The notes: generated from the letters alone by a model not told the origin. DNA of 64,000 nt from IMGVR_UViG_3300046559_001153:124001-188000, one strand, 5' to 3'; numbered from the stretch's first letter, positions 28,016 through 62,414 are shown. Made by a program: numbers and translations.

Positions 28016-28024
28016 AAGTGAAGC

Positions 28025-29421: not shown

Positions 29422-29423
29422 CA

Positions 29424-31556: not shown

Positions 31557-31567
31557 TTTGTGTTGCC

Positions 31568-31681: not shown

Positions 31682-31682
31682 T

Positions 31683-31700
31683 TAACTTTTCGTAAAGTTA
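31683..31700. promoter_or_regulatory. Palindromic motif, copy 3
   Basis: TAACTTTTCGTAAAGTTA, 20 nt before ATG 31721. Confidence 0.8.
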
Positions 31701-31720
31701 CCTCTTACCGAAAGTTTATC

Positions 31721-33283: not shown

Positions 33284-33285
33284 CT

Positions 33286-35174: not shown

Positions 35175-35175
35175 G

Positions 35176-35997: not shown

Positions 35998-36007
35998 AAG
36001 GCTTTAG

Positions 36008-37405: not shown

Positions 37406-38080
37406 GTGCTGTTACTGTTCGGGGAACTATCACCGCCGAGCTGGGTCCGCGAAGTCTACTGTGCAGGTTTCGGCATAGGGCAGCGGTTCAAGCAGGCGGA
37501 TGCCCCGGAAGTAGTGCACGCGCTCTCAGGCATGCTGTATGTTACCCCCTCGAATTGGGGTTTACTGGCCGTCCCGAACGCCCTGGTTCGTGGCGTTTAT
37601 AGCGCCATTGACGAGCCGGGTGTTGAACTCCCAAGTCACAGCGAAAAACCAGGCAAACTGGATGCGCACATCAGCGTGTTCCGCCCTGAGGATATCGCGG
37701 CGATCGGCGGGCCCGGCAAGTTGACCGAGCGTGGCAAACACTTTCATTACACGACCGGGCAGCTCAAAACAGTTCAGCCTGCCGGCTGGCCGCAGATGAG
37801 CAAGGTCTGGATGCTCGAGGTTAAGAGTCCGGAGTTACAGACGTTGAGACAGTCGTACGGTCTCACTCCGCTGCCGCACGACAATGACTTCCAGTTTCAC
37901 ATTACTGTCGGAGTCCGTCGCAAGGGTGTACTGGGTCGTAACGAGATCAGCAAGTCGATCCTGGTCGACGACAAACCAGCCGACCCGCTTCCCGTACCAC
38001 GCAAATTTATCTGCAGCGTCTGCGGTCATGATGACTGTGCTGGCTGCACCGGGACAACACAGAGAGTCCACGTTCCATGA
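37406..38080 (+). CDS. 2H phosphoesterase superfamily protein
   Basis: Two HxS/T motifs, DAHISVF and FHITVG, about 80 aa apart. Confidence 0.7.
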   Translation: MLLLFGELSPPSWVREVYCAGFGIGQRFKQADAPEVVHALSGMLYVTPSNWGLLAVPNALVRGVYSAIDEPGVELPSHSEKPGKLDAHISVFRPEDIAAIGGPGKLTERGKHFHYTTGQLKTVQPAGWPQMSKVWMLEVKSPELQTLRQSYGLTPLPHDNDFQFHITVGVRRKGVLGRNEISKSILVDDKPADPLPVPRKFICSVCGHDDCAGCTGTTQRVHVP

Positions 38081-41674: not shown

Positions 41675-44600
41675 ATGTCAATCCTGTCTGGCTCCGGCAG
41701 CCTGCTCCAGCCGATGCGCCCTGCGGCCCACGAGGATGAGCCTGACAGCCTCACAGACATGTCCAAAGCGCGTCAAAGGCTGTTTGACCACACCTTGACG
41801 GCTGCGCAAGGCCTGGAGCCCCTGGCGAACTCCAAGCACACGTTAAAGCTGACCGACGTCCACTATTCTGGCCCGGACGAGTATTCTCTAAAGGACCAGA
41901 AGAAAGCCATTCTGACAGGTGACACGCTTGGCCGGACGCTGAAAGGCACATTCCAGCTTCTGGATAACGTCACAGGCCAGCTGGTCGACCAGAAACGGGT
42001 GACACTGGCTAACGTGCCTTACCGGACGGACCGTGGTACGTTCATCCACAATGGGACTGAATACGCCGTTCGAAATCAGATGCGGTTGTTGCCTGGTGTC
42101 TTTACCCGTATTCGAGGCAACGGCGAGATTGAAGCCCACACGAACGTTATGCCTGGGAAGGGGCTGAGCCACCGCTACTTTCTAGATCCTGACAAAGGCG
42201 TGTTCTACATTCGCGTAGCCCAGTCCAAGACGCCGCTAGTGTCGTTGCTCACCGCAATGGGCGTGACCCACCATCAATTGCGTGACGCCTGGGGCCCCGA
42301 GTTGGCCGCGACCAACTTGACGCATAACGATCCGGCTGACGTAAAGAAACTGGCCGGGAAATTTCTCCCGCGGATCCCCGAGAATCAGACCGAGGCGCAC
42401 ACGACTGAGCAACTGGTAAATGCCTTTCAGGCCATGGAGCTCGATCCGGAAGTCACTAAACGAACGCTCGGGCACCCATTTACCAATGTCGGACCGGAGA
42501 CCATTCTTCGAACGACACAGAAACTGCTTCAATTGCAAAAGGGCGAAGTTGAGCCCGACGATCGTGACCACCTGGCCTACCAGAAAATCATGGCGCCCGA
42601 GGATTTGTTCTCGGAACGGATTCGTCGCGATGCTGGCAACATTCGCCGTCAGCTGTTGTTCAAAGCCAGTCAGCGTGGCAATCTGCAGGGCATTGGTTCC
42701 CGACCGTTCCAGAAGCAATTGAACTCGGTCATCCTCACCAGCGGTGTCGGTACGGGTCTTGAGGAAACATCACCGCTCGAACTGCTGGACAAGATGTCAA
42801 CGATCACCAGCATGGGTGTCGGTGGACTACCAAGCACGACAGCCATTCCGTTGGAGTCCCGAGCCGTACAGCCAAGCCATCTCGGATTCATGGATCCACT
42901 GAAGACGCCCGAAAGCGAGGCGGCTGGCGTTATTCTGAATATCGCCGGACAGGTCCGTCGTAAGGCTGATGGGCAGCTCGCCAAACAATTCACCAATCTG
43001 CACACGGGGCAACTCGAGTGGCGTACCCCGCAGGACGTGGCTGATTCAGCCATCGCCTTCCCGGGTGAAATGGCCAAACCGGGCAAACGAATCATAGCCA
43101 TGTTGAATGGTAAGCTGCAGTATGTGTCCAAAGCCGATGTCAAATACGAGCTGCCGCATTTCGAACACGTCTTCAGCGACGTCACCAATCTGGTGCCGAT
43201 GAAGTCGGCTTTGAAGGGCCAGCGGGCAGTGATGGGTGCCCGTATGTTGACGCAAGCCCTGCCGCTCGAGAACCCCGAAGCCCCATTCGTTCAGTCGGCT
43301 GTTCCGGGAACGGGCGGGCAGAAGAGTTTTGACGAACACTTCGGTGGATTCATGGGTGCCGTGCGAGCCAAGCAGGGTGGTCAGGTCACTGCCGTATCGC
43401 CGGAAGCCATCACGGTCAAGCACGACGACGGAACGACGCAGAACTACGAGTTGTATGACTCGTTTCCGTTCAATCGCCGTAGCCGACTGCACAATACGCC
43501 AATGGTGCAACCGGGCCAGCGTGTCGGTCCGGACGATCTTCTGGCTAAGTCCAACTTCACCAACGACAACGGGGCAATCGCGATCGGCAAGAACGCCTAC
43601 ATCGGATACATGCCGTATGGAGCCGGCACCTACGAAGACGCCCAGCTGGTGTCGGAGAGCTTCGCCAAGAAACTGCGATCAGAACATTTGTACCAGCACG
43701 ACGCGACCTGGGGTGACGCACTCGATAAGAAAGGCAAAGCGCCATACGTGTCGCTGTTCCCGTCGAAGTTTGACCGAAAGCAGTTGGACACGATCGACGA
43801 GGATGGGGTCGTCAAGCCGGGCACGGTTGTTGATTACGGCCACCCACTCATTCTGCTGGCAAAGGGGCGAGAGCACTCGCAAAGCAAAGTGCATCGCAAG
43901 GGCCAGCTACAGCACACCGACGCGTCGGTGACCTGGTCGTACAACTCACCCGGTATCGTCCGCGACGTAGTGAAGACAGACAAAGGACCGATGGTCACTG
44001 TGACGTCTATGCGGTCGACACAGGAGTCAGACAAGTTGAGTGACCGATTCGGCGCCAAGGGTGTTATCGGCAAGATTCTGTCGGACGACTTGATGCCGCG
44101 TGACAGCACGGGTCGCCCATTCGACATGTTACTGAATCCGGCTGGTATCCCGTCGCGACTCAATCCGGTGAAGATCCACGAAGCCACACTCGGCAAGATT
44201 GCGGAAAAGACTGGCAAGCCGTACAAAATTGAGGATTTTTCGAACATTGCCGACCTGCGAGCCTTCGTCGAACAGGAAGCCCAGAAGCATGGCGTACCCG
44301 ACACAGAGACGGTCTTCGACCCAGGTACCAACAGATACATCCCCGGCGTGAAGACTGGCGTGCAGTGGATCATGAAGCTGCACCATATCGCCGAAGACAA
44401 AGAACAGGGTCGCGGTGCCTCGGGTGGTTACACACTCAGCGGTGTACCGGCCAAGGGTGGTGACGGTGAGTCAAGTAAGAAGCTGTCCATGGGGGAAACG
44501 AATGCCCTGTTGTCTCACGGTGCGTTGAATCTGCTGCGTGATTCGCAATTGTTACGAGGCCAGCGAAACGAACCATATTGGCTGGCCTTCATGCAGGGGC

Positions 44601-46093
44601 ACCGCCCGCCCGAGCCCGGTATCCCGCTTGTTTACGAGGAATTCATCAACGAATTGAAAGCTGCTGGGATCAACCCAGTTCGCAACGGGGCCAGCATGAA
44701 CGTCATGGCCTTGACGAACAAGGACATTGACCAGTTGTCGGGCGGCCGCGAATTGCAAAATGGGAACACGGTCAACTTTGACGGTGATCTGAGCCCGGTG
44801 GCCGGCGGCTTGTTCGATCCAGCTTTGACTGGCGGGCATATGGGCCGCCGATGGTCGCACGTAACGCTGGCCGACCCGATGCCCAATCCGGTGATGGAAG
44901 AGCCTATACGTAAACTGCTGGCCCTGACTAAGAACAAATTCGAAGGGGTTCTGGCTGGGACTGAATCGATCGGTTCGCACGGTACAGGACCGCAAGCTCT
45001 GTTCAAAGCCCTGCAGGGGATCAATCTGGACAAGGAGCTTTTGCTCGCCAGGATGCAGATCAAGTCGGGCAAGAAAACAGCCCGTGATGTGGCCGTTCGC
45101 AAACTAGGGTATCTCAAAGCAGCCAAGTCGCTGGGGATCCACCCGTCAGACTGGATGCTCGACAAAGCACCAATTCTTCCCCCCCTCTTTCGTCAGGTGG
45201 CGAAGATTTCCGATTCGGGCCAACCAATTATTTCCGATGCCAATTACCTTTACAAAGAGCTGATTGACGCGAATACGACGCTCAAGAAGCTGAAGGGGGT
45301 GGTGGGTGAAAACGTGGGTCAAGAACGCCTTGCGTTATATAACTCGTTCAAAGCAGTCACTGGCCTGGGCGACCCAAGCCATCCGAAACTGGTCGAGAAG
45401 GGAGTCAAAGGCCTGCTTGCCGGGATCTTCGGAAGTAGTCCCAAGTGGGGCTCAGTCCAGTCCCGATTACTCAGTACCCCTGTGGATATTGTTGGGCGTG
45501 CCACTGTACAGCCCAACGCCGACCTCGACATGGATTCCATTGGACTTCCCGAAGAACGAGCCTGGACCGTCTACAAAAACTTCATAGTCCGTCGCCTTAA
45601 ACGCCAAGGCATGCCGTTGACGAATGCCCTGCAGGCTCACAAGGATCAGACCCCGCTGGCGAAGAAAGCCCTGCTTGATGAGCTGGAGACGCGACCAGTT
45701 ATCTACAGCCGGGCGCCCATCCATCATAAGTACGGGATCATGGCCGCTTGGCCGCAGCTGGTGAAAGGTAACGCCGTTCACTTGTCACCGCTGGTGACGG
45801 TTGGATTTGGTGCGGACTTTGATGGCGATCAGATGAACTACCATGTGCCTGTGAGTGATGCGGAAGTGCAGGACGCTGTCGAGCGAATGCTGCCGTCTCG
45901 CAATTTGATCAGCCCGGCCGACTTTCGAACGCCCATGTTCATGCCACGGCACGAAATGCTAATGGGATTGTTCGAATCAACCAGACCGGATAGAATTGGT
46001 CGAAGTATCACATTTCGCAATAAGCAAGACGCTATTGCCGCTTATCGACGCGGAGAGTTGACCGTGCAGGATTCGGTGACAATTCTCCATTGA
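41675..46093 (+). CDS. rpoBC: DNA-directed RNA polymerase beta subunit fused to the N-terminal catalytic half of beta'
   Basis: Beta motifs: VPYRTDRGTFIHNGTE, DPLKTPES, DKLSDRFGAKGV, LNPAGIPSRLN, KLHH, ELKAAGIN. Beta' motifs after about 44696: GGLFD, PILPP, SDANYLY, PVDIVGR, SRAPIHH and catalytic GADFDGDQM (45809-45829). Confidence 0.95.
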   Translation: MSILSGSGSLLQPMRPAAHEDEPDSLTDMSKARQRLFDHTLTAAQGLEPLANSKHTLKLTDVHYSGPDEYSLKDQKKAILTGDTLGRTLKGTFQLLDNVTGQLVDQKRVTLANVPYRTDRGTFIHNGTEYAVRNQMRLLPGVFTRIRGNGEIEAHTNVMPGKGLSHRYFLDPDKGVFYIRVAQSKTPLVSLLTAMGVTHHQLRDAWGPELAATNLTHNDPADVKKLAGKFLPRIPENQTEAHTTEQLVNAFQAMELDPEVTKRTLGHPFTNVGPETILRTTQKLLQLQKGEVEPDDRDHLAYQKIMAPEDLFSERIRRDAGNIRRQLLFKASQRGNLQGIGSRPFQKQLNSVILTSGVGTGLEETSPLELLDKMSTITSMGVGGLPSTTAIPLESRAVQPSHLGFMDPLKTPESEAAGVILNIAGQVRRKADGQLAKQFTNLHTGQLEWRTPQDVADSAIAFPGEMAKPGKRIIAMLNGKLQYVSKADVKYELPHFEHVFSDVTNLVPMKSALKGQRAVMGARMLTQALPLENPEAPFVQSAVPGTGGQKSFDEHFGGFMGAVRAKQGGQVTAVSPEAITVKHDDGTTQNYELYDSFPFNRRSRLHNTPMVQPGQRVGPDDLLAKSNFTNDNGAIAIGKNAYIGYMPYGAGTYEDAQLVSESFAKKLRSEHLYQHDATWGDALDKKGKAPYVSLFPSKFDRKQLDTIDEDGVVKPGTVVDYGHPLILLAKGREHSQSKVHRKGQLQHTDASVTWSYNSPGIVRDVVKTDKGPMVTVTSMRSTQESDKLSDRFGAKGVIGKILSDDLMPRDSTGRPFDMLLNPAGIPSRLNPVKIHEATLGKIAEKTGKPYKIEDFSNIADLRAFVEQEAQKHGVPDTETVFDPGTNRYIPGVKTGVQWIMKLHHIAEDKEQGRGASGGYTLSGVPAKGGDGESSKKLSMGETNALLSHGALNLLRDSQLLRGQRNEPYWLAFMQGHRPPEPGIPLVYEEFINELKAAGINPVRNGASMNVMALTNKDIDQLSGGRELQNGNTVNFDGDLSPVAGGLFDPALTGGHMGRRWSHVTLADPMPNPVMEEPIRKLLALTKNKFEGVLAGTESIGSHGTGPQALFKALQGINLDKELLLARMQIKSGKKTARDVAVRKLGYLKAAKSLGIHPSDWMLDKAPILPPLFRQVAKISDSGQPIISDANYLYKELIDANTTLKKLKGVVGENVGQERLALYNSFKAVTGLGDPSHPKLVEKGVKGLLAGIFGSSPKWGSVQSRLLSTPVDIVGRATVQPNADLDMDSIGLPEERAWTVYKNFIVRRLKRQGMPLTNALQAHKDQTPLAKKALLDELETRPVIYSRAPIHHKYGIMAAWPQLVKGNAVHLSPLVTVGFGADFDGDQMNYHVPVSDAEVQDAVERMLPSRNLISPADFRTPMFMPRHEMLMGLFESTRPDRIGRSITFRNKQDAIAAYRRGELTVQDSVTILH

Positions 46094-46105: not shown

Positions 46106-46678
46106 ATGACTCGACGCAAAATTTGCACATACTGCGGTAAATTGAAAGCGACTAGCGCGTACGGTAAAAAAGGCGCTGGGCTTAATCATCATTGCAAAGA
46201 TTGTGACAGCATCAAGCAACAAGCTTTCGCAAAAACCCCCCACGGCCGAGCGGTTAAAGCTTGGAATTTGATCAAGTATCGTGTCAGAAACCCGTACGGG
46301 AAAAATAAGACGTATGTTGGTGTTGAACTCCGGATGACTCGCGACGAATTCATGACCTGGGCTGTTCCGGCTTATACCGCATGGGTTACTGATGGAAATC
46401 TGATTGAATCGGCTTCTGTGGATCGAAAAGAAGACGGGCATTACGCGATCGGAAATCTTCAGATCATTTCTCGGGTTGAAAACGCCAAAAAGCAAAAACG
46501 TAATAAAAACGTACACGCTCCGGCCGGCCACGCGTGGTGCCCTAGCTGTGTCCAGTACAAATTGAAATGTGAGTTCTACACGGACAAGGCTAGTTGGAAT
46601 GGCGTAAGTTGCCGTTGCCGACAATGTCACAACCAATATCACCGCAATTATTACAGACAGCGACAATTATCTAAATGA
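46106..46678 (+). CDS. Free-standing HNH-like homing endonuclease with Cys-rich zinc-finger modules
   Basis: SVDR...GHYAIGNLQIIS..EN core flanked by CxxC pairs. Visibly more AT-rich than its neighbours; starts 12 bp after the RNAP stop. Confidence 0.7.
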   Translation: MTRRKICTYCGKLKATSAYGKKGAGLNHHCKDCDSIKQQAFAKTPHGRAVKAWNLIKYRVRNPYGKNKTYVGVELRMTRDEFMTWAVPAYTAWVTDGNLIESASVDRKEDGHYAIGNLQIISRVENAKKQKRNKNVHAPAGHAWCPSCVQYKLKCEFYTDKASWNGVSCRCRQCHNQYHRNYYRQRQLSK

Positions 46679-46814: not shown

Positions 46815-47312
46815 ATGACTGACGCCGAATATCTAGTACAGGCGTATCTTCTGGCTCGCGATCAATCACCTGACCCCCGCACGCAAAACGCAGCGCTGCT
46901 GGTTGAACCTGGCGGCGATGTGGTTTGCCAAGCTGTGAACAAATTTCCCCCCGGAGTCGTCGTATCGGCTGACAGGTGGGAACGCCCACTCAAGTATGAG
47001 TACGTCGAGTGCGCGGAACGCAACTCGATTTATGAGTGCGCGAGACTGGGGATTAAGACCAGTGACCTGGTGATGTACGCGGCCTGGGCCTCGTGCGCTA
47101 ATTGTGCCCGAGCGATCATCCAGGCCGGCATCAAACTGCTGGTGACCCACCGACCGGCTGACGCTGACAACGGTACGTGGGGTGACATCATCGCGAGAGC
47201 TGATGGCATGATGCGTGAGGCGGGGGTTGAACTTCGCTTCGTTACTGAAAGATTGTTTACTCATGATGACGAATTTTTTGTTCGTCGAAACGGAAAGGCA
47301 ATGAAGCCGTGA
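46815..47312 (+). CDS. dCMP deaminase-like zinc deaminase
   Basis: SPDPRTQ.AA, CAERNSI (CAE in place of HAE), SCANCARAIIQAGIK. Confidence 0.85.
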   Translation: MTDAEYLVQAYLLARDQSPDPRTQNAALLVEPGGDVVCQAVNKFPPGVVVSADRWERPLKYEYVECAERNSIYECARLGIKTSDLVMYAAWASCANCARAIIQAGIKLLVTHRPADADNGTWGDIIARADGMMREAGVELRFVTERLFTHDDEFFVRRNGKAMKP

Positions 47313-47686
47313 CGTCAAAGAGAATGAAGTTCAAAACGGGTGCAGTGCGGAGTTCAGATGCGGCGGGAGTGAGATACGATCTGGTTTCACCGATTGGCCT
47401 ACGACGACTGGCCGAGACATACGCAGAGGGAGCAGAGAAATATGGTGTGGGTAACTGGCTGAAAGGATTTCCGGCCAGCGACCTGCTGAATCACCTGATG
47501 AAGCATATCGATCAGTGGCGATCGGGGGACAAGACTGAAGACCACTTGGCGCATGCGACTTGGGGTTTGTTCACTCTGATGCATTTCGAAGAAACCCGAC
47601 CGGATCTGTTCGATTTACAGAAGTGGATTCCAGAACAGAAAAGGACGAAACGAAAAAGAACAAAACGACCGGCGAAGAAAGTTTAG
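47309..47686 (+). CDS. dATP/dGTP diphosphohydrolase-domain protein (DUF5664-like)
   Basis: F.TGAVR...RYDLVSP..L.RLA..Y..GA.KYG..NW.KG...H...DHLAHA.W. Confidence 0.85.
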   Translation: MTSKRMKFKTGAVRSSDAAGVRYDLVSPIGLRRLAETYAEGAEKYGVGNWLKGFPASDLLNHLMKHIDQWRSGDKTEDHLAHATWGLFTLMHFEETRPDLFDLQKWIPEQKRTKRKRTKRPAKKV

Positions 47687-47946
47687 ATGTCAGAAGTTTA
47701 AGTACGTTTTTCTTACATGGACCAGGAAGGCAAAAATGCCACGCAAGCTCAAGGACGAACTGCGAAGACTCCCGGTTAAATCGCAATCACGGAAGGGTAA
47801 ACGATCGTCGGAGGATGCCGACAAGTCTCTCCAAGTTCTAACTGCCGGCCCCCTGACCGACGGTTCAATCGATGACGGTGATGACGATCAGGCTGGAGAA
47901 GCTGACGGAATTTCAACAGTCGAAACCTAACCCGAGGGAACGGTAA

Positions 47947-52455: not shown

Positions 52456-52694
52456 TGTACATCGAAGCCATCGAACGATTCGGTAAGCCGCCCGTGCGGT
52501 TGGAAGTCAGTCAGGTCGTCATTTACCGAGACGACGGAACCCCCATCTCGCTGGCCAGTTTGTACGGCCCCGATGGGGCCATTTTCGTTGAAACGGCCGA
52601 GGATCCGGAAAAATTCAACAAGGCCCTGCAGACACTGGGGATCGATAAAACAGTCATCGTCGACAACCTGGTCATGTCCGAACCAACCCAATAA
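52455..52694 (+). CDS. Small hypothetical protein
   Basis: TGATG-coupled; MYIEAIERFGKPPVRLEVSQVVIY. Confidence 0.65.
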   Translation: MYIEAIERFGKPPVRLEVSQVVIYRDDGTPISLASLYGPDGAIFVETAEDPEKFNKALQTLGIDKTVIVDNLVMSEPTQ

Positions 52695-52709
52695 CTTTTT
52701 ACAAAGTTA
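52692..52709. promoter_or_regulatory. Palindromic motif, copy 5
   Basis: TAACTTTTTACAAAGTTA (identical to copy 1), 22 nt before ATG 52732. Confidence 0.8.
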
Positions 52710-52731
52710 CAGAGACCAGCAGGTAGGCAAG

Positions 52732-55700
52732 ATGCCCGCGACCTTCATAGGGAAAATGGGTCAGCTGCTGGTCAACGAGGCTCTGCCCGAAGATCTGCGT
52801 AACGGTAAGACCCTGGATTCAAGGGGCTTGACCGACCTGCTGCGGGATGTGGCTGAACGTCACCCCGACAAGTACCGGGACATCTCACACAAGTTGACCC
52901 AGCTGGGTGAAGACGCAGCTCAGCAACTCGGCGGCTATTCGTTCGGGCTCAATGCCATGCGACGGGCCGGGTCAGCCAATGTCATTCGCGATCGCATCAA
53001 AAGCCAGGTTCAGTCACTGCTCGACAATGACAACCTGTCAGATGATGCACGCGAGTCCCAGATCGTCAAACTCCTGGGTCAGGCCCAGTCAGAACAAGAG
53101 AACGCCGTCTACGACGAGAGTTTGAAAGAGAACAATCCGATCGCCTTGCAGATCAAGTCAGGCGCTCGCGGCAAGAAGATGGCTCTCAATTCTCTGCGTG
53201 GGTCCGATCTGCTGTATGTCGACCATCGCGACCGGCCAGTGCCCATCCCCGTCCTGCGGAGTTACCCTGAGGGCCTGTCGCCGGCCGAGTATTGGGCTGG
53301 GGCCTATGGTGCTCGTCACGGCATTGTCAGTGTGAAGCTGGGCACAGCCCAGTCAGGCTTCCTGGCGAAACAACTCAATCAAGCGACCCACCGGCTGATT
53401 GTGACGCATGAGGATGACGCTCCGGTCGATACGGTCCGAGGCCTGCCAGTCCCTGTCGACGATAACGACAATGTGGGGGCCTTGCTGGCCCATCCGGCTG
53501 GTGGTTTTGGGCGGAACACGGTTCTGACGCCCAAGGTTCTGAAGTCCCTGCATGATGGCGGCATTCAGAGAATTCTGGTACGCAGCCCGACTGTTGGCGG
53601 GGCACCTGATGGGGGTCTCTACTCACGCGATGTTGGCATTCGAGAAACTGGCGGTCTGCCGCCCAAAGGAACGTTCTCCGGTCTGCAGGCCGGTCAGGCG
53701 ATCTCTGAGCCGTTGTCGCAGGCCACCTTGTCCGCCAAGCACGCAGGGGGCGTTGCCGGAGCATCCAAATCAGTGTCAGGCTTTGCCTGGATCAACGCCC
53801 TGGTTCAGATCCCCAAGGTATTTCCTGGCGGGGCAACGCATTCAGAAGTAGACGGGCGTGTGCAGCAGATTACCAAGGCACCTGGCGGCGGTTTGCACGT
53901 GCAGGTGAACGGACTGGAGCATTACGTGCCGCACGGGCTGGCTTTGACAGTTGCCCCGGGCGACGCGGTTGAAGCTGGCGACGTGCTCAGTGAGGGCATT
54001 CCCAGCCCGGCCGAGATCGTCAAGCACAAGGGAATTGGTGAAGGTCGCCGGTACTTTGTGGATGCCATGCGTAAAGCATTGACCGACTCTGGTGTTCGAA
54101 ACAATCGCCGAAATCTCGAACTCATCAGTCGTGGTCTGATCAATCACGTCGAGCTCGACGCGGAGATCGGCGAACACGCGCCAGACGACGTTGTCCCATT
54201 CGACACGATCGAACGGGATTACGAGCCGAGAGAAGGCAGTCACACGCTGCCTGTCCACCAGGCAATCGGCCAGTATCTCGAGAAGCCCTACCTGCACCAC
54301 ACGATTGGTACGAAGGTCAAATCGAGCATGTTGCCGGACTTCAAGCATTTTGGAGTTGAATCGGTTCACGTGCACAAAGATCCGCCGCTATTCCATCCGC
54401 TCATGGTTCGCGGTATGTACAACTTGCAGCACGACCCGGACGCCATGACAAGGAATCTAGGTTCAGGGCTGCAGGCAAGCTTCCTGGACTCGGTCCACCG
54501 TGGCGGCGGCAGCGACGAAAAGGGTACCAGCTATGTTCCCGGCCTGGCCCGTACTGTGGATTTTGGCCGCATTGGCGTTATCCGGCCGACTGTGGTTACA
54601 CCGCAGAGATCGACTATGAAAATCGCAGCTGGCAGCCCGATTGCCCCGGCTCTCGACCCGAAACCGGCTCCCATCAAACCACTGGCGCCACCACAGCCTC
54701 AAATAAAACCGATTGCTCCTCCACCGTCGCCGGCTTTGCAGGCGAAGCCTCAATCTGTGCTGGGCGATAGTTCGATCAACGGGTTCGGTGACTTCTTCCA
54801 TCATGCCGGTAATCTGCTGCGTGGGCCCGGGTACGACGCCGGGATGGCACCGGCAACTGCCGGTTTCAAGAACACGATGACGCCGCAGCAGTTTGGCCAA
54901 CAGATGCGGACTGATCTTCCCGGTCTGCCTAATCCGGTTGCACCAGCCGCACAACCCGGAGTATGGGATCAAGCGAAAGCCATAGCGCCTGGCCTGGCTA
55001 CCAATCTCGGGGTTAATGTAGCTGGGCAGCAGATAGCAAAAAATACGTTGGTGCGAGCCGTTCCCAGATTAGGAGTAGGTGCCGCCTCAAAGCTCTTGCC
55101 TCTCGGTATCGGCGCCGCAGTTGCCGAGCCGATTGGGTGGCTCGGTAAAAAGACCGGAATTCCAGGCTTCGAAAACGATGCAGCATATGACACCAATGCG
55201 TATCGTCAAGAGGCCGAAGGTTTGCACTACGGGATGCCGGCCGGCTGGCGTCAGGACACCAATCGACCGTGGTATATTCGAATGGGAGACTGGTTGGCCA
55301 ATGACGCAGGAACAGCCGTAATGCAGCCTCAGACGGCCGTCATGAACGCGTTTGGCAAGTCGAGCGATGACGCCTTGGGAATTCCTTCTCGCGACGAGAT
55401 GGGAGACTTATCCAAGCTCGAAACGGGCAAGCTCTATGACCTGTTTACACAGCTCCATAACGCCACCAAAGCCGGTCCCCACACTGATCTGAGGATTGGC
55501 GATCCGGAGCAGGGGCTGCACTCTTGGGCCGTGCCGAAGGGTTTACCCGAGTCTGGGAAGAAGCATCTGGCTGTCCACCAGCCAATTCACGAGCATTCCT
55601 ACGGGGGCTGGTCGGGCACGATTCCCGAGGGCGAATACGGGGCCGGTACGGTCAAGAGTCAGATCAAGGGCAAGGCCCTGGTGACCGAGTCGGGTCCGGG

Positions 55701-56883
55701 CAAACTGCATTTTACGACAGCTCACATGAAGCATCCCGAGCGGTTCACTGTGGTGGCGCCAAAAAGCTTCGGTGAAAACAATCACCTGCTGCTCAACACG
55801 ACGCCGACCGAGCCGCTGCCGTACCAGAAGATCCACTACAAGAAAGTTCCGACCGAACAGGTCGAAGGAAAGTTGAAGGAGTTAGAACCCGGTTCGTCGG
55901 TGCAGGCCAAGATTGACGGTGCATCGAGCCTGGTCAAACTGCTCAAGGATCAGCTCGAACTGTATTCGTACCGGGCATCAAAGCCGACAGGAAAACCAAT
56001 CATTCACACGGAGAAGGTGTTACATGGCCGGCCTCGGATTGAGATCCCTCCTGAGTACCACAACAGCATCCTGCGCGGTGAGTTACACGGGGTCAAGCAA
56101 GACTCCGAAGGAAAAGAAACGGTTATTCATCCCAGCGAACTTGGTGGTATCCTCAACTCAACGATTGCTCACTCGCTGGCAAAACAAGAGACCTCAGGCG
56201 TTCGGCTCCGTAACGCACTGTTCGACATTCAACAGGTTGGCAACACGCCAATTGACTTCTCCAAGACGCCATATTCTGAACGTCGGGAACACTTGAAGAG
56301 CATTCTGCCGTCGCTGCCGCAGGACATTTTTCACTTGACCGACGAAGCCAAGACACCGGAAGATGCGCTGAAGTTGTGGAAAGACATTGGTAGCGGGGAT
56401 CACCCGAAAACTGAGGAAGGAATCGTTATCCACTCTCCAACGGGCAAGCCCCAGAAGGCTAAGTACATTGAAGATCACGACGTTCACATCCGCGGTATTT
56501 TCCCTGGCGAAGGCCGTCTTGCTGGAACTCATGCCGGCGGCTTTGAGTACTCTGCTGAGCCTGATGGTCCTATTCTCGGCCGTGTTGGCACTGGCTTTTC
56601 TGACGATGTTCGTCGCCAGATGCATGATCGACCTGACGATTTCGTGGGGCGGGTTGCCCGGGTGAAGTCCCAGGAGAAGTTGCAGTCGGGTGCGTTGAGA
56701 GCTCCGGCTTATATCGCTCTCCACGAAGATTACCCAGTGTCGTCGGCTTTGAATAAGGCGGCCGAGCTAGAACGCGTCCGTCTGCGTGTGAAAGAATTGG
56801 CAGAGAAAAAGGCGACCGCTTCTCCAATTTCTCTGGCCAGAGAACGCCTTCAAGCTATCCGAGCGAAAAATTTGGGCCTATAA
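52732..56883 (+). CDS. rpoC: Fusion protein: RNA polymerase beta' C-terminal half + Pro/Gly-rich linker + LigD 3'-phosphoesterase domain + ATP-dependent DNA ligase
   Basis: Beta' motifs: KSGARG, SYPEGLSPAEY..GAYGARHG...TAQSGFL, GLQAGQAISEPLSQATLSAKHAGG. PE motifs: QLH...HTDLR, SWAVPKG, H..SY, GTIPEGEYGAGTV. Ligase motifs: KIDG, RGEL, LFDI, EEGIVI, KAK, GRVGTGFSD. Start moved to ATG 52732 (AGGTAGG RBS). Confidence 0.92.
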   Translation: MPATFIGKMGQLLVNEALPEDLRNGKTLDSRGLTDLLRDVAERHPDKYRDISHKLTQLGEDAAQQLGGYSFGLNAMRRAGSANVIRDRIKSQVQSLLDNDNLSDDARESQIVKLLGQAQSEQENAVYDESLKENNPIALQIKSGARGKKMALNSLRGSDLLYVDHRDRPVPIPVLRSYPEGLSPAEYWAGAYGARHGIVSVKLGTAQSGFLAKQLNQATHRLIVTHEDDAPVDTVRGLPVPVDDNDNVGALLAHPAGGFGRNTVLTPKVLKSLHDGGIQRILVRSPTVGGAPDGGLYSRDVGIRETGGLPPKGTFSGLQAGQAISEPLSQATLSAKHAGGVAGASKSVSGFAWINALVQIPKVFPGGATHSEVDGRVQQITKAPGGGLHVQVNGLEHYVPHGLALTVAPGDAVEAGDVLSEGIPSPAEIVKHKGIGEGRRYFVDAMRKALTDSGVRNNRRNLELISRGLINHVELDAEIGEHAPDDVVPFDTIERDYEPREGSHTLPVHQAIGQYLEKPYLHHTIGTKVKSSMLPDFKHFGVESVHVHKDPPLFHPLMVRGMYNLQHDPDAMTRNLGSGLQASFLDSVHRGGGSDEKGTSYVPGLARTVDFGRIGVIRPTVVTPQRSTMKIAAGSPIAPALDPKPAPIKPLAPPQPQIKPIAPPPSPALQAKPQSVLGDSSINGFGDFFHHAGNLLRGPGYDAGMAPATAGFKNTMTPQQFGQQMRTDLPGLPNPVAPAAQPGVWDQAKAIAPGLATNLGVNVAGQQIAKNTLVRAVPRLGVGAASKLLPLGIGAAVAEPIGWLGKKTGIPGFENDAAYDTNAYRQEAEGLHYGMPAGWRQDTNRPWYIRMGDWLANDAGTAVMQPQTAVMNAFGKSSDDALGIPSRDEMGDLSKLETGKLYDLFTQLHNATKAGPHTDLRIGDPEQGLHSWAVPKGLPESGKKHLAVHQPIHEHSYGGWSGTIPEGEYGAGTVKSQIKGKALVTESGPGKLHFTTAHMKHPERFTVVAPKSFGENNHLLLNTTPTEPLPYQKIHYKKVPTEQVEGKLKELEPGSSVQAKIDGASSLVKLLKDQLELYSYRASKPTGKPIIHTEKVLHGRPRIEIPPEYHNSILRGELHGVKQDSEGKETVIHPSELGGILNSTIAHSLAKQETSGVRLRNALFDIQQVGNTPIDFSKTPYSERREHLKSILPSLPQDIFHLTDEAKTPEDALKLWKDIGSGDHPKTEEGIVIHSPTGKPQKAKYIEDHDVHIRGIFPGEGRLAGTHAGGFEYSAEPDGPILGRVGTGFSDDVRRQMHDRPDDFVGRVARVKSQEKLQSGALRAPAYIALHEDYPVSSALNKAAELERVRLRVKELAEKKATASPISLARERLQAIRAKNLGL

Positions 56884-57150: not shown

Positions 57151-59652
57151 ATGTCCATTCTGCTTGCAGGTAGCCAGTCGCTCGCGAAACGCGCTAACAT
57201 CGGCGGCGATCCTGAAGGGAACTTCGAACAATCGTTCGCCTCGCTGGGCTATAACTTCCTGAGTGAAAAAGCCCCCAGGCTGCTCGAGCACATGCTGGGC
57301 TTCCAGCTGCTTGACCGCAACGACGACATGTCACGAGCTGTCGGCGTTTATGGTTTCCAGGCTGATACCAAGCGACTGTACATGCCTTTGTTTTTCCTGA
57401 ATGGGGAACTTCGCGGCCAGGAATTGCTCTTCGTTCAGAACAAGGACGAGGGGCAGTTTGTCCCCATGAAGGAGAACTGGGTCAACTTCCTGCTCAGCAA
57501 GTCGCCACACATCATGGGCGAGGCGTCGCAGAAGGATGTGTTCCAGATGGGCGGGATGTGGCCGGACCTGCGTCCATTCACGAACGCTTACCGCGGTAGC
57601 AAATACTCATGCGACATGCCGCGTATCCAAGAGTGGGCCAAGCCGTTCATGCCCGTCTATGCTCGTCTCTGTACGACCAACCCTCTGCGTGACACTCGTT
57701 ACGCGAAGATCGCGACAGCCCAAAACCTGCTGAGCGAATCTCCGATGGCCGTGAAAATGGCCATCGATCTGTGTGACCGATTCCCGAACGTCAAGGCGGC
57801 CATGCACCGGTGTTACGGAGCGGACGTCTTTGAGAAGGCTCTACTGACCATCAAAGCCCGACTGACCAAAGAGGCGTCGGATCGAGGCAGCATTCTCTCG
57901 TTCAAGCCGCAGAAGGTGGCAGTCGCGCGTTCCCGATCGAGCATACTGCCCGACCTGACCCCCCAGGACCCCGTTAAGCTGGGGGCTTTGAAGATTATGC
58001 GGGTCGATCCGAATGAACGTTTTACGCACAACATTCCCGATCGATCACGCGAAGAGGCCACTGGCGACACCCGCCGCGGCGCCGTCGTGATCACCGACAA
58101 ACGCTTGCCGCAGGACAAGTCGACCCTGTACAACACGGCGATCCATACGGCCTACACGAATCCAACTCGATCTTCCCTGGCTGAGGTGCTGGCCGGGGCC
58201 GGCAAGTTCGAGAAGTGCCTGATCATCCATCGCCCATACTCCGGCAAGGGGCAGCACACCTTCGTGACTGTCGTCCGAGCGGAAGGTCAAAGTTCAGCCC
58301 GCAACTGGATCAACTCGGACGCTACGAACATTTACGTTCGCCAGCCGATTGAAAGCCAGTTCGATTTCAAGACCTGGTTCGACGGATTGTCGTCCGCCAA
58401 GATGACCAAGGACAGCACGTATGTCGCGCTGACCGGTGACGGCCGCGGTACATTGCCGTTTACAGTGAACAGCGTTCTGGATGATGACTGTTACCGAGTC
58501 CAATACGAGACCGGACACAAGCGACCACAGTACGCTCACATGTCGCGAAATTACAGCACCAACGGATTGGGCGACCGCGACACGCCGCCCAATCCGTCGG
58601 GTTACACGGATTACAATGCCTTGCTGCATTTGAACGGCCGTAAGGGCTCCAGCATCCACGCCGTTGGTGGCGAACTGTGGATCCCCGACAGCGCTAAAAT
58701 CCTCAAGATCCAAGACCCATTTGACCCAGAAGATGACAGTGACGAAGACTCAATTTCGCCGCTCCAGCCTGGCAACCTGATTGACGTGCAGAATCAGATC
58801 TACCAGAAAACAGCGTCCCTCAAGCTCTGGACGGTTGGGTCAGACGAAATCGCTCTGTCGACAAAGTTTGGCACGCGCCGCATGAGCAAACAAGCCGCTT
58901 ACGTGGCGATGGTTGCTGACCTTGGGCTGGGGATTGATGATGCAGACGCGGCCATGGACAAAGTGACCAAAGCCGGTTCGGCCAAGTTCAGGATTCTGTA
59001 CGGACCGTTCTACCAGAAGCGGGCTGACGCGTGGCCCGGCTACGGCGGCGACCTGCTTGATCAGGGCCCGAGTGCTCCCCGAGAAGGGCCGCCACCGACC
59101 GGATCCGGCTTCCCGTGGTACGGCGGAGCGATCAACAAGTATCCGCAGGAGGAGTACCTGGAAGTTCCAGGACTCAATGCCTACTCAACCAATCCCTGGA
59201 TCTACGATCCCACTCGTATCCCCGATCCAGGGACTGGCCCCGGCGCCTACGGCACAGACCAGGCCGGGTCGGGAAGCTTCTCTCAGGGTCAGGATTCGTC
59301 ATCCCAGGGCGTCCAAAATGCGGCGGCATCTGGCCAGAAGGAAGTCTTCGATACGACCATCTTGAGCAACCTGCTCAACTCGGTTCGACAGGAGAGCGTG
59401 GTCGATCGCTACTTGAGCGACCTGATGACTGGGCTTGACCGAATCGGGCGTATTCTGTTCAGCTTCTACTGGCACATGGATGACGTCAAAGAGCACTACG
59501 GTGCGGCCGAGACGCCCGATCTCATCGATGCCATGCGAAATGCGTTTGAAGAATGCGGCGACGTCACGTTGAAACTTCGTCAGAACTCGATGAACCCTGA
59601 CATGGGTGAAATGGGATCGCCGAACGTTGAAGACGTGGCTCGTGCTGACTGA
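57151..59652 (+). CDS. Large conserved putative virion protein
   Basis: 833 aa with multiple KxA motifs (KRAN, KIAT, KEAS, KTAS, KRAD). Confidence 0.78.
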   Translation: MSILLAGSQSLAKRANIGGDPEGNFEQSFASLGYNFLSEKAPRLLEHMLGFQLLDRNDDMSRAVGVYGFQADTKRLYMPLFFLNGELRGQELLFVQNKDEGQFVPMKENWVNFLLSKSPHIMGEASQKDVFQMGGMWPDLRPFTNAYRGSKYSCDMPRIQEWAKPFMPVYARLCTTNPLRDTRYAKIATAQNLLSESPMAVKMAIDLCDRFPNVKAAMHRCYGADVFEKALLTIKARLTKEASDRGSILSFKPQKVAVARSRSSILPDLTPQDPVKLGALKIMRVDPNERFTHNIPDRSREEATGDTRRGAVVITDKRLPQDKSTLYNTAIHTAYTNPTRSSLAEVLAGAGKFEKCLIIHRPYSGKGQHTFVTVVRAEGQSSARNWINSDATNIYVRQPIESQFDFKTWFDGLSSAKMTKDSTYVALTGDGRGTLPFTVNSVLDDDCYRVQYETGHKRPQYAHMSRNYSTNGLGDRDTPPNPSGYTDYNALLHLNGRKGSSIHAVGGELWIPDSAKILKIQDPFDPEDDSDEDSISPLQPGNLIDVQNQIYQKTASLKLWTVGSDEIALSTKFGTRRMSKQAAYVAMVADLGLGIDDADAAMDKVTKAGSAKFRILYGPFYQKRADAWPGYGGDLLDQGPSAPREGPPPTGSGFPWYGGAINKYPQEEYLEVPGLNAYSTNPWIYDPTRIPDPGTGPGAYGTDQAGSGSFSQGQDSSSQGVQNAAASGQKEVFDTTILSNLLNSVRQESVVDRYLSDLMTGLDRIGRILFSFYWHMDDVKEHYGAAETPDLIDAMRNAFEECGDVTLKLRQNSMNPDMGEMGSPNVEDVARAD

Positions 59653-61171: not shown

Positions 61172-62414
61172 GACTCAGCTTCTGTCGGCTGTCAAAAACG
61201 TTGTCGGACACGTCGACAATGGGGATGACCCGACTGACGCCGTGGTCAAAGTGGCTCAAGAGCTGGAATTGCCCCGCGGGCATCTGCAGCTGCTTTGCAG
61301 CGCGTACAACACGGGTCGCGTGAACGCCCAGAGGAAGATGGCAGCTGCCAGCATCATGGAGCGGTTTGAGGATATCCCGCTGGCTGACCACGAGAAGGCC
61401 GCCCAACAGATCTGGCCTGACAAAATTGAAACACCGTCCGAGCGCCTGAGCAAAACAGCCGTCTCGGACGATTACCGAAAAGCTCCGCACTGGTTAGCAC
61501 CGTGTCTGACTAGCCCTCCTGCGCGAAAAGCAGCCAGTGCGGAGCCTCTTGTTCTTACCCCGGCGCAACGCAAAGACGCCGCCTGGAAGACGATCCTTGA
61601 CGGCCAACGCCGCATTCAAGACGTCCGTCCCAAGTCGTCGGCCGCCCGTGACAACATGGTCGCCTCGATGCAGACGCTGACCGGATACTTCAAACGGGCC
61701 AATTGTCTGCCGTTTTCCGAGGTGCATTACGCAGTCGCGTCAGATCCCGCGGCCGAAGCTCTGATGCAGGTCGTGGGTGCCAGCCTGGGACGTGAGAAGC
61801 AGGCGGCAGTTGTCCCCCGAGTGATGCACTCGGTTGTCTGGACAGAGGCCCCGTACACACTGATCAAAGAAGCCCTGGCCGCCTGCGAGTTGGCCGTTAA
61901 CGCCCGTCGTGAACTGGTTGAACTTGAAGCCAGTATTAAGACGGCCCGAGAGGAGGTATACGGCCCCTCTGGGGCCCATAAAAGTGGGTCTGAAAAAGTG
62001 GGGGCTGGAGGATCTATTTTCGGGACAGCGCTTGGAACCACTTTCGGGTCAACATTGCCTAAGCCCAAATCTACGGGCGAAAGAGTTGAGTCTGCTGTCA
62101 CCGCGTTAGACGATCCGGATCACGAAAACGCTATGCGTAACATCCAGATCACGGCCATGCTGCGAGACATGATGTCGAATGACGAAGTGATCAAGGGCTA
62201 CGAGCCGGAAGAGGTTCTGCACGCCTACAATCAAATCTCGCAGACAGCACCAACTGTCGCCATGCACTCGATCGCTCTCGGACCTGAGCTTCGATCTGTC
62301 CTGCAGCGCAACCGGGCACCGCACGAGACGTCACAACTGGTCGGTCTGGAGAAGGATCTTCGCGGACTACGGCCGCCACTCGGGGCGGCGCCTGAAAAGA
62401 AGGACACGAAATGA
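61146..62414 (+). CDS. Putative virion protein rich in KxA motifs
   Basis: KQAE, KMAA, KTAV, KAAS, KDAA, KRAN, EKQAAV. Confidence 0.75.
   Translation: MKTLSKQAETQLLSAVKNVVGHVDNGDDPTDAVVKVAQELELPRGHLQLLCSAYNTGRVNAQRKMAAASIMERFEDIPLADHEKAAQQIWPDKIETPSERLSKTAVSDDYRKAPHWLAPCLTSPPARKAASAEPLVLTPAQRKDAAWKTILDGQRRIQDVRPKSSAARDNMVASMQTLTGYFKRANCLPFSEVHYAVASDPAAEALMQVVGASLGREKQAAVVPRVMHSVVWTEAPYTLIKEALAACELAVNARRELVELEASIKTAREEVYGPSGAHKSGSEKVGAGGSIFGTALGTTFGSTLPKPKSTGERVESAVTALDDPDHENAMRNIQITAMLRDMMSNDEVIKGYEPEEVLHAYNQISQTAPTVAMHSIALGPELRSVLQRNRAPHETSQLVGLEKDLRGLRPPLGAAPEKKDTK

What the first reader, a model, noticed from the sequence alone, without database searches (positions are those of the whole stretch)
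52732..56883. RNAP beta' C-half fused to a LigD phosphoesterase and ATP-dependent DNA ligase: candidate virion-delivered transcription plus end-repair system
Seen in one uninterrupted frame: beta' bridge-helix and trigger-loop regions (about 52732-54570), then MKIA|A (54616-54630) and a roughly 270-aa Pro/Gly/Ala linker. Next is a PE domain with the QxH...HxDxR and H...Y catalytic pattern (about 55430-55790), then ligase KIDG (55909), EGIVI and an OB fold with GTGFSD, ending in an NKAA/EKKA tail. Established: LigD PE heals 3' ends for NHEJ ligation. I know of no described RNAP-ligase fusion. Inference: the fusion co-packages an end-healing and sealing enzyme with the virion RNAP, probably released by KxA cleavage. 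It could circularise or repair the incoming genome (for example after restriction or CRISPR cuts) before any phage gene expression.
Basis: partly seen in the sequence, partly recalled or inferred. Interest (0 to 1): 0.92.

Follow-up and report, generated by a model that had tools for sequence, protein, structure and literature searches.

The report
Phage RNA polymerase subunit fused to DNA-repair ligase
A ~224-kb uncultured phage makes one protein that joins the rear half of its own RNA polymerase beta-prime subunit to an intact DNA end-cleaning enzyme and DNA ligase. Related phages encode that enzyme pair as a separate gene near the polymerase genes, so the fusion is a rare, real variant that ties DNA end repair to the phage's probably virion-carried transcription machine.

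Summary
One uninterrupted frame (52573-56883; real start most likely the ATG at 52732, giving 1383 aa) encodes four parts:
- the RNAP beta' C-half, with bridge helix and trigger loop;
- a ~250-aa Ala/Pro/Gly-rich linker;
- a LigD-type 3'-phosphoesterase (PE) with all catalytic residues;
- an ATP-dependent DNA ligase (KIDG Lys at 55909, plus OB fold).

The identical protein is encoded on 18 contigs, and the six shown come from six different samples, so an assembly error is unlikely.

New context:
- The ~445-aa PE-ligase module is a large phage family: 694 clusters at E<1e-30, 43-56% identical among the best 150.
- It occurs alone or fused to an SNF2 helicase, a 2H phosphoesterase, a kinase, NUDIX or InPase. 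Several of these domains occur in "polyvalent" injected phage proteins.
- It often lies within 10 kb of the RNAP genes.
- No other fusion to beta'C was found.
- In an unbiased sample, only about 13% of beta'C genes carry any long tail.

Virion delivery rests on two indirect points: synteny with structural genes, and virion mass spectrometry of a 26-30%-identical relative, Salmonella phage Arash. The proposed "KxA" cleavage is untested. A junction motif is enriched there, but its role is unknown.

Verdict: a real and unusual new variant of known kinds; the mechanism is inferred.

The parts
41675..46093 (+). Partner gene: RNAP beta fused to the N-half of beta' (1472 aa), with the catalytic DFDGD at nt 45815-45829
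   Evidence: Pfam Rpb2_6 1e-41, Rpb2_3, Rpb2_2 and Rpb1_2 1e-17. PHROG 24349 and PHROG 25354 positions 169-539. 30.5% identical over its full length to Arash gp206. DFDGD located.
52732..56883 (+). The fused gene: beta'C, linker, PE, DNA ligase (1383 aa from the ATG at 52732; the frame is open from 52573)
52732..54570 (+). RNAP beta' C-half module: bridge helix (GARHG at 53308), trigger loop (ISEPLSQ at 53701), ending at ..VDFGR
   Evidence: Pfam Rpb1_5. Aligned to solved bacterial beta' chains at E 7e-31. About 55% identical to hundreds of metagenomic beta'C proteins.
54616..54633 (+). Junction motif MKIAAG (hydrophobic-K-hydrophobic-[ASG]), 16 aa after the end of beta'C
   Evidence: The motif class is about 8-fold enriched in the first 100 aa of the tails of relatives, and 33 of 81 tails have it. 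Its function is unknown; cleavage is only a hypothesis.
54634..55365 (+). Low-complexity Ala/Pro/Gly-rich linker (aa 688-931) with one hydrophobic Gly-zipper-like stretch (aa 833-851)
   Evidence: Composition and hydropathy. No homolog outside its own >=90% cluster.
55366..55851 (+). LigD-type 3'-phosphoesterase domain: H962, H970, D972, R974, SWAVPKG, H1006, Y1010, GEYGAG
   Evidence: Pfam LigD_N 3e-12. Aligned to PE structures 3p4h, 3p43 and 3n9b. These residues are invariant in 125 homologs. The AF2 beta-rich domain has pLDDT >90.
55852..56463 (+). ATP-dependent DNA ligase nucleotidyltransferase domain: motif I K1113-I-D-G (Lys at 55909), motif III E1171, motif IV EG 1282-1283, motif V K1296/K1298
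   Evidence: All top 50 Foldseek matches are ATP-dependent DNA ligases.
56506..56736 (+). Ligase OB-fold domain (GRVGTGFSD ... ALHED)
   Evidence: Weak Pfam DNA_ligase_OB_2 and A_C hits, stronger in homologs. Conserved columns. Model.
56737..56880 (+). About 48-aa helical, Lys/Ala/Glu-rich C-terminal extension, absent from stand-alone homologs
   Evidence: Stand-alone homologs end at ALHED. The model shows low pLDDT followed by a helix.
37406..38080 (+). Stand-alone 2H-SAK phosphoesterase gene, probably an associated end-processing enzyme
   Evidence: Pfam 2H-SAK 3.5e-11. Its homolog (up to 61% identical) is fused N-terminally to PE-ligase in 25 of 149 relatives.
57151..59652 (+). Conserved 833-aa downstream gene, related to a virion structural protein
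   Evidence: Its C-terminus matches Arash gp218 'structural protein' at E 4e-8. A homolog lies downstream of beta'C in 76 of 79 related loci.

Best explanation
Shown:
- This is a genuine translational fusion.
- The phage's RNA polymerase is encoded by two genes: beta+beta'N at 41675-46093 and beta'C at 52732 onward.
- The beta'C polypeptide continues through a ~250-aa flexible Ala/Pro/Gly linker into a two-enzyme DNA end-repair module.
- That module is a LigD-type Mn-dependent 3'-phosphoesterase, which removes 3'-phosphates or 3'-ribonucleotides, followed by an ATP-dependent DNA ligase (adenylated on K1113) with its OB fold.
- Both active sites are intact.
- The module belongs to a large phage family that is usually a separate gene, or is fused to an RNAP-linked SNF2 helicase or to other end-processing domains, and often lies next to the RNAP genes.

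Inferred:
- The tether keeps the end-healing and sealing enzyme physically on the polymerase.
- Because this polymerase is probably packaged in the capsid and enters with the DNA, as in phage Arash, the ligase would be co-packaged at one copy per polymerase.
- It would then act on the phage genome from the first minutes of infection, before any phage gene is expressed.
- Its likely task is to clean 3' ends and seal nicks or breaks, whether pre-existing, nuclease-inflicted or met by the transcribing enzyme.
- Whether the tail is later cut off at the junction motif is open.
For: - ORF continuity across 18 contigs; the six shown are from six samples.
- Domain identity.
- Catalytic residues are invariant across 125 homologs.
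- A confident AF2 model (pLDDT 88.9) whose top 50 PDB matches are all ATP-dependent DNA ligases.
- The module family is large: 694 clusters at E<1e-30.
- Its fusion partners are SNF2, 2H-SAK, AAA_33 kinase with a HAD-like domain, NUDIX, InPase and DUF5661. SNF2, 2H and InPase are domains described in polyvalent injected phage proteins (PMC5512222).
- Gene neighbourhood in relatives: PE-ligase directly upstream of beta'C (L021/L140, L139), about 1 kb downstream of a fused beta-beta' gene (L044), 5.5 kb downstream of beta'C (L018), or 2-9 kb from beta-beta'N (L015, L016, L020, L034, L037).
- The SNF2 partner is about 30% identical over its full length to Arash gp217, the gene next to Arash beta'C, which is abundant in virions.
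- The window block is syntenic with Arash gp206, gp216, gp218 and gp222, which virion mass spectrometry found in particles.
- A second, independent fusion joins an RNAP-derived piece (the beta N-terminus) to PE-ligase in P0220.
- Thirteen beta'C tails in relatives share modules with regions that flank PE-ligase in other proteins.
Against: - There is no direct evidence that this protein, or any PE-ligase of the family, is in virions.
- Arash is only 26-30% identical and lacks the module. Its virion preparation also contained clearly non-structural enzymes.
- The fusion occurs in one species-level cluster only, so it could be a neutral accident.
- 68 of 78 related beta'C genes have no tail at all, so tethering is not required.
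- The substrate (DNA nick, double-strand break or RNA-DNA junction) is unknown.
- No Ku and no LigD polymerase domain were seen.
- An internal start at M917, with a weak AGGA 9 nt upstream, cannot be excluded as a second source of free PE-ligase.
- Only 64 kb of about 224 kb was visible, so another ligase or a separate SNF2 helicase may exist elsewhere in the genome.
Confidence: 0.5

Rival explanations
1. Intracellular repair or replication ligase. The PE-ligase is the phage's ordinary DNA ligase, used for lagging-strand sealing and for repair of nicked or damaged, possibly base-modified, DNA during replication. Its attachment to beta'C is a recent gene fusion that merely co-expresses it or loosely localises it. 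Virion packaging plays no part.
For: - Most family members are free-standing or sit in non-RNAP contexts. For example, P0220 lies in a PolA / RecA-like / helicase module, and most of the 32 IMG/VR loci had no RNAP gene within 10 kb.
- The fusion is unique to one cluster.
- Most beta'C genes are tail-less.
- ATP-dependent ligases are common replication components of large phages (PMC7824862).
Against: - The module repeatedly lies close to, or is fused with, RNAP parts and the RNAP-linked SNF2 helicase.
- Its partner domains are for end-healing or nucleotide processing, not replisome parts.
- One ligase per RNAP would be an odd stoichiometry for a replicative ligase.
Confidence: 0.3
2. LigD-like 'ribo-patch' repair with RNAP acting as the polymerase. 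In bacterial LigD, a ribonucleotide-adding polymerase, the PE and the ligase work in sequence. Here the multisubunit RNAP would replace the LigD polymerase domain. It would lay down RNA at a gap or break, the PE would trim it to a single 3' ribonucleotide, and the ligase would seal it.
For: - The order of parts (polymerase, PE, ligase) parallels LigD.
- From established LigD biochemistry: the PE resects 3'-ribonucleotide tracts and the LigD ligase prefers a 3'-ribonucleotide at the nick.
- The PE active site is fully conserved.
Against: - This rests on analogy only.
- Most relatives keep PE-ligase separate from RNAP.
- No Ku was seen.
- Promoter-dependent multisubunit RNAPs are not known to act as gap fillers.
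Confidence: 0.07
3. RNA-directed function. The nucleotidyltransferase would act on transcripts or on host-cleaved RNAs, by RNA repair or a cap-like 5' modification, coupled to transcription. This would resemble enzymes riding on the tail of eukaryotic RNA polymerase II.
For: - Partner domains in sister proteins (2H phosphoesterase, PNK-like kinase with a HAD-like domain, NUDIX) are typical of RNA end-healing toolkits (PMC7824862).
- Motif I lacks the Arg usual in DNA ligases (KIDGAS).
Against: - All top 50 structural matches are ATP-dependent DNA ligases; none is an RNA ligase or a capping enzyme.
- The Pfam and PHROG matches are to DNA ligase families only.
- The PE domain is so far known from DNA-repair ligases.
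Confidence: 0.06
4. Artefact or dead gene: a mis-assembly or a decaying fusion that makes no functional product.
For: Only one species-level cluster carries the fusion.
Against: - The identical 1383-aa product is found in six different samples and 18 contigs.
- All catalytic residues are intact.
- The apparent split forms are contig-edge truncations.
Confidence: 0.02

Closest known systems
Bacterial LigD (NHEJ ligase of Pseudomonas and Mycobacterium): PE and ligase domains
   Same: - The PE domain has the same catalytic set (His, His-x-Asp-x-Arg, His-xxx-Tyr), aligned to solved PE structures 3n9b, 3p4h and 3p43.
- The ligase has an adenylation domain plus an OB fold. Mycobacterial LigD ligase structures (6nhx, 1vs0) are among the fold matches.
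   Different: - There is no primase-polymerase domain.
- No Ku partner was seen.
- The module is encoded by a phage.
- Here it is joined to an RNA polymerase subunit.
- Sequence identity to LigD is low: the ligase part has only a 2.6e-4 match in the PDB, to a Rhizobium phage ligase (named).
Polyvalent proteins of phages and conjugative elements (Iyer, Burroughs, Anand, de Souza, Aravind 2017, PMC5512222)
   Same: - Long multidomain proteins built from a shuffled pool of enzymatic modules joined by linkers, proposed to be packaged and injected with the DNA.
- Sister proteins of this module carry SNF2, 2H and InPase domains, which that paper describes in polyvalent proteins, plus NUDIX and DUF5661.
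   Different: - The carrier here is a core RNAP subunit rather than a MuF, portal or methylase-helicase scaffold.
- In the passages found, that paper mentions ligases only as RNA ligases, which it says it never saw associated with polyvalent-type 2H domains. The term 'ligase' occurs three times in it.
Virion-packaged multisubunit RNAPs of large phages (Salmonella phage Arash; by analogy the phiKZ/AR9 virion RNAPs)
   Same: - The same split occurs (beta+beta'N in one gene, beta'C in another) in a syntenic block with structural genes.
- Arash beta and beta' dominate its virion proteome.
   Different: - Arash beta'C (gp216, 606 aa) has no tail, and Arash has no PE-ligase.
- Identity is only 26-30%.
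- phiKZ-type enzymes are split into more subunits (own knowledge and PMC7598289).
SNF2-type helicase genetically linked to phage RNAP beta'C genes (Iyer et al. 2021, PMC7824862)
   Same: That paper reports a Swi2/Snf2 helicase that co-occurs with, and neighbours, the beta'C gene in jumbo phages. In this phage group the homologous helicase (Arash gp217-like) is often fused to the PE-ligase module.
   Different: In this window the helicase is absent from the visible 64 kb, and PE-ligase is attached to beta'C itself. No SNF2 gene lies within 10 kb of beta'C in the 79 close relatives.

Membership tests
LigD 3'-phosphoesterase domain (Pfam PF13298) | Profile match above the curated threshold | tested here: met
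   46.9 bits against a 31.1-bit cut-off, aa 960-1034
LigD 3'-phosphoesterase domain (Pfam PF13298) | Catalytic and metal-binding residues (P. aeruginosa LigD His42, His48, Asp50, Arg52, His84, Tyr88; numbering from own knowledge) | tested here: met
   They align to H962, H970, D972, R974, H1006 and Y1010 in the alignment to 3n9b, 3p4h and 3p43. They are invariant in 125 homologs.
LigD 3'-phosphoesterase domain (Pfam PF13298) | Mn-dependent 3'-phosphatase and 3'-ribonucleotide-resecting activity | not testable with these tools
   Needs an enzyme assay
ATP-dependent DNA ligase (covalent nucleotidyltransferase superfamily) | Motifs I (KxDG), III, IV and V in order, followed by an OB domain | tested here: met
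   K1113-I-D-G, E1171, EG1282-1283 and K1296/K1298 are invariant. Weak Pfam OB matches here are stronger in homologs.
ATP-dependent DNA ligase (covalent nucleotidyltransferase superfamily) | Profile or fold match to DNA ligases rather than to RNA ligases or capping enzymes | tested here: met
   Pfam DNA_ligase_A_M scores 25.6 against 26.2, marginal here, but 27-34 bits in homologs. PHROG 114 scores 8e-19. The Foldseek top 50 are all ATP-dependent DNA ligases, E 2e-14 to 4e-9.
Bacterial LigD (complete NHEJ enzyme) | Primase-polymerase (AEP) domain in the same protein | tested here: not met
   No such Pfam match in the 1436-aa protein
Bacterial LigD (complete NHEJ enzyme) | Ku partner gene | tested here: inconclusive
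   No Ku family hit in the 31 window ORFs scanned with Pfam. The scan was incomplete, and only 64 of about 224 kb were visible.
Multisubunit RNAP beta' (C-terminal half) | Bridge helix and trigger loop regions that align to cellular beta' | tested here: met
   Rpb1_5 scores 63 bits against 28.5. Alignment to Thermus beta' 968-1381 at E 7e-31.
Multisubunit RNAP beta' (C-terminal half) | A complementary N-half with the catalytic Asp triad, and a beta subunit, in the same genome | tested here: met
   ORF 41675-46093 has the Rpb2 domains, Rpb1_2 and DFDGD.
Polyvalent (virion-injected multidomain) proteins | Array of shuffled enzymatic modules from the polyvalent domain pool | tested here: inconclusive
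   Sister proteins carry SNF2, 2H-SAK, InPase, NUDIX and DUF5661, and 13 beta'C tails share modules with them. This protein itself carries only PE and ligase.
Polyvalent (virion-injected multidomain) proteins | Packaged in the virion and delivered with the DNA | not testable with these tools
   Only indirect evidence: synteny with Arash proteins found by virion mass spectrometry

The most novel reading that the evidence does not exclude
The fusion reveals a transcription-coupled DNA sealing system. A capsid-delivered RNA polymerase would carry its own 3'-end healing enzyme and ligase and, in relatives, an SNF2 translocase and other end-processing enzymes. It would proof-read the incoming genome as it transcribes, repairing nicks and nuclease cuts where it stalls. 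This would be a phage counterpart of transcription-coupled repair, working before any phage gene is expressed.
Probability: 0.15. Interest if true: 0.8.

Novelty: new variant of a known kind. Interest (0 to 1): 0.6.

Why it matters
A fusion of two proteins is strong genomic evidence that they work together. Here it links a large, apparently undescribed family of phage LigD-like end-repair enzymes to the phage's own, probably virion-carried, RNA polymerase and to its SNF2 helicase partner.

If the enzyme does enter the cell with the DNA, that would be a new way for phages to survive host nucleases or to tolerate nicked genomes. It would also add DNA end repair to the list of activities phages inject.

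The module is compact (about 445 aa), abundant and diverse, so it is also a source of new ligase and 3'-end-cleaning enzymes for laboratory use.

If the fusion is only a local accident, what remains is the description of the module family and its repeated placement near the RNAP genes.

Tried and rejected
- Nucleotide search against 50,697 phage records: no match. The protein-level search found only distant RNAP relatives (Vibrio phages D69, D181 and D148; Arash) and weak ligase hits.
- My first impression that most beta'C relatives carry long tails was an artefact. The protein search only admits candidates 0.55-1.75 times the query length. An unbiased locus sample gave 10 tailed out of 78.
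- A natural split variant: the 520-aa cluster members P0291 and P0293 start at the contig edge, so they are truncations.
- The scenario 'deletion of an adjacent SNF2 helicase fused beta'C to helicase-PE-ligase': close relatives have no SNF2 gene next to beta'C, and none of 79 loci has one within 10 kb. Not supported.
- The junction motif as a general inter-module cleavage site: not enriched at PE-ligase borders in 149 other proteins.
- Capping enzyme or RNA ligase reading: not favoured by the fold search.
- A locus search with a single protein found only the window's own genome. The alignment-based search worked.
- The linker has no homolog outside its own cluster. The apparent BLAST extension into the linkers of P0021 and P0013 was not confirmed by phmmer.
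- The internal Met codons at aa 888-943 lack a convincing ribosome-binding site. Only M917 has AGGA, 9 nt upstream.

Full report
ORF 52573..56883 on the + strand is 1436 codons without a stop. Relatives align from query residue 62 to their own residue ~6. The domain matches in this frame are:
- Pfam RNA_pol_Rpb1_5 (aa 234-408, 3e-17), LigD_N (aa 960-1034, 3e-12), DNA_ligase_A_M (aa 1094-1297, 25.6 bits against a 26.2-bit cut-off) and weak OB-fold matches.
- PHROG 25354 (a beta'-like family) and PHROG 114 (ATP-dependent DNA ligase, 8e-19).

The linker (aa 684-939) is 40% Ala+Pro+Gly.

**It is not an assembly artefact.** The exact 1383-aa protein is encoded on 18 contigs. The six places shown come from four JGI samples and two Logan runs, including two ~224-kb contigs that are probably the whole genome. 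Two 520-aa members of the same cluster looked like a split form, but their gene begins 46 nt from a contig end, so they are truncations.

**The polymerase part.**
- The beta'C module (nt 52732-54570) aligns to Thermus beta' 968-1381 and E. coli beta' 717-949, which includes the bridge helix and trigger loop.
- The rest of the enzyme is in ORF 41675-46093. This is a 1472-aa fusion of beta (Rpb2 domains) with the beta' N-half (Rpb1_2), and it holds the catalytic DFDGD at nt 45815.
- About 6.6 kb of small genes separate the two ORFs. They include an HNH/EndoVII-like nuclease, a dCMP deaminase and a MazZ-like gene.
- This two-gene layout, followed by a conserved ~830-aa gene, is found in 76 of 79 related IMG/VR loci.
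- Salmonella phage Arash has the same layout: gp206 and gp216, then gp218 and gp222.
- In Arash the beta and beta' proteins are among the most abundant proteins in virion mass spectrometry, and the neighbouring helicase gp217 is also abundant. The authors caution that abundant enzymes may be carried over (PMC10585845).
- The group probably corresponds to the RNAP-encoding Caudovirales described from metagenomes (PMC7481178). I did not test that identity.

**The repair part.**
- The PE region aligns to solved PE domains (3p4h, 3p43, 3n9b) with the His, His-x-Asp-x-Arg and His-xxx-Tyr residues in place.
- Across 125 homologous modules, these residues and the ligase motif residues (K1113, D1115, G1116, E1171, EG1282-1283, K1296, K1298) are invariant.
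- An AlphaFold model built on 18 sequences is confident (pLDDT 88.9, pTM 0.79).
- Its 50 best PDB matches are all ATP-dependent DNA ligases, including mycobacterial LigD, T4, LigIV, Lig E and Chlorella virus ligase. None is an RNA ligase or a capping enzyme.
- No LigD polymerase domain is present. No Ku was seen in the 31 ORFs scanned with Pfam.

- The ~445-aa PE-ligase unit is a large family. It has 694 representative clusters at E<1e-30, and the best 150 are 43-56% identical across the whole unit.
- It sits at the start, middle or end of proteins of 390-2913 aa. Twenty-five of the 149 relatives are stand-alone.
- Its fusion partners are an SNF2 helicase, a 2H 'Swiss-army-knife' phosphoesterase, an AAA_33-type kinase with a HAD-like domain, NUDIX, InPase and DUF5661.
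- SNF2, 2H and InPase are domains described in polyvalent proteins, which are proposed to be packaged and injected with phage DNA (PMC5512222).
- The SNF2 part is about 30% identical over its full length to Arash gp217.
- An SNF2 helicase linked to beta'C genes was already noted in jumbo phages (PMC7824862).
- This window also holds a stand-alone 2H-SAK gene (37406-38080). Its homolog is fused to PE-ligase in 25 relatives.

**Neighbourhood in relatives.** In IMG/VR loci the module often lies near the polymerase genes:
- directly upstream of a tail-less beta'C (L021/L140, L139);
- about 1 kb downstream of a single 2891-aa beta-beta' ORF (L044);
- 5.5 kb downstream of beta'C (L018);
- 2-9 kb upstream of beta-beta'N (L015, L016, L020, L034, L037).

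One protein, P0220, joins a copy of the beta N-terminus (35% identity, E 4e-38) to a GNAT domain and PE-ligase. This is a second, independent link between a polymerase part and the module.

**How unusual the fusion is.**
- No other protein combines beta'C with PE-ligase. This holds for the 5.8-billion-protein search, where only the window's own cluster scored for both halves, for the 149 best module relatives, and for 119 tailed beta'C proteins and 82 loci searched with a module profile.
- Long beta'C tails are themselves a minority: 10 of 78 in an unbiased sample. My first list was biased by that tool's length filter.
- Where tails exist they are very diverse. Some carry an acylphosphatase, a kinase, DUF5661, DUF4269 or NUDIX. 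Thirteen share modules with regions that flank PE-ligase elsewhere.
- The 3' end of beta'C, just before the conserved ~830-aa gene, therefore acts as a slot where cargo from one shared pool is occasionally attached.

**Mechanism.**
- Shown: a real fusion of a core RNAP subunit to intact PE and DNA-ligase domains, and a recurrent genomic association of this module with the RNAP and its SNF2 partner.
- Inferred: the tether delivers or holds the end-healing and sealing enzyme with the polymerase. Given the Arash data and the structural-gene synteny, this is probably inside the capsid and at the moment of DNA entry.
- The main rival is an ordinary intracellular repair or replication ligase that was fused by accident.
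- A LigD-like scheme with RNAP as the ribonucleotide polymerase, and an RNA-directed role, are minor rivals.

**Cleavage.** A hydrophobic-K/R-hydrophobic-[ASG] motif (MKIAAG here) lies 17-60 aa after beta'C in 33 of 81 tailed relatives. That is about 8 times its density in the rest of the tails. It is not enriched at other PE-ligase borders. A cut there would leave a beta'C of the same size as the tail-less orthologs, but nothing tested here shows proteolysis.

**Literature.** Full-text searches found no description of an RNAP-ligase fusion or of virion LigD-like enzymes in phages.

**Verdict.** A real and rare arrangement, a new variant of known kinds (polyvalent-type phage proteins, LigD-type repair domains, virion RNAPs). 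Its functional reading is plausible but unproven.

Noticed in passing
window 6136-7356; 47324-47687; 46815-47312: A PurZ-like adenylosuccinate synthetase (PHROG 1211, 8e-52), a MazZ-like dGTP_diPhyd_N gene (precomputed Pfam) and a dCMP deaminase. Together they suggest the phage replaces adenine with 2-aminoadenine (a 'Z genome') or otherwise edits its nucleotide pool.
   Followed up: partly
window 46106-46678: An HNH/endonuclease VII-like ORF with a Lar-like C-terminal part sits immediately after the beta-beta'N gene. The spacer between the two RNAP genes is about 6.6 kb here, against about 2-3 kb in relatives.
   Followed up: no
relatives P0005, P0024, P0041, P0058, P0117 and others (positions equivalent to query aa 265 and 387): Many beta'C homologs carry inteins (LAGLIDADG_3, Hint, Hom_end_hint) at two recurrent sites. 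The window's copy has none.
   Followed up: partly
L044:403-9078: A distant relative encodes beta and the whole of beta' in one 2891-aa ORF. A 161-aa ORF and a stand-alone PE-ligase (431 aa) follow it.
   Followed up: partly
P0220 / L224:10001-13459: This protein joins a copy of the RNAP beta N-terminus (35% identical to window protein aa 26-253), a GNAT acetyltransferase and PE-ligase. It sits in a replication-gene neighbourhood.
   Followed up: partly
window 54616-54633 and the tails of relatives: The hydrophobic-K/R-hydrophobic-[ASG] motif (for example FGLFKLS, FFGGRFKVG, IKFAEV) is about 8-fold enriched just after the end of beta'C. Its function is unexplained.
   Followed up: partly
window 25019-36000: A cluster of glycosyltransferases (three GT2, one GT11-like, one GT47-like), three FkbM-type methyltransferases, a nucleotide-sugar epimerase-like gene and an NT5C-like nucleotidase. 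They may serve DNA or virion glycosylation. A D12 adenine methyltransferase lies at 16443-17291.
   Followed up: no
window 55069-55125 (aa 833-851) and window 62411-63511: A hydrophobic Gly-zipper-like stretch lies inside the linker. A weak YMGG Gly-zipper match occurs in a downstream 366-aa ORF. This may hint at membrane contact.
   Followed up: no
L001:20787-23402 (begins at window 63518 and runs past the window end): An 871-aa gene whose N-terminal part matches Arash structural protein gp222 (38% identity). It has a faint LAGLIDADG hit, so it may be a structural gene containing an intein.
   Followed up: no
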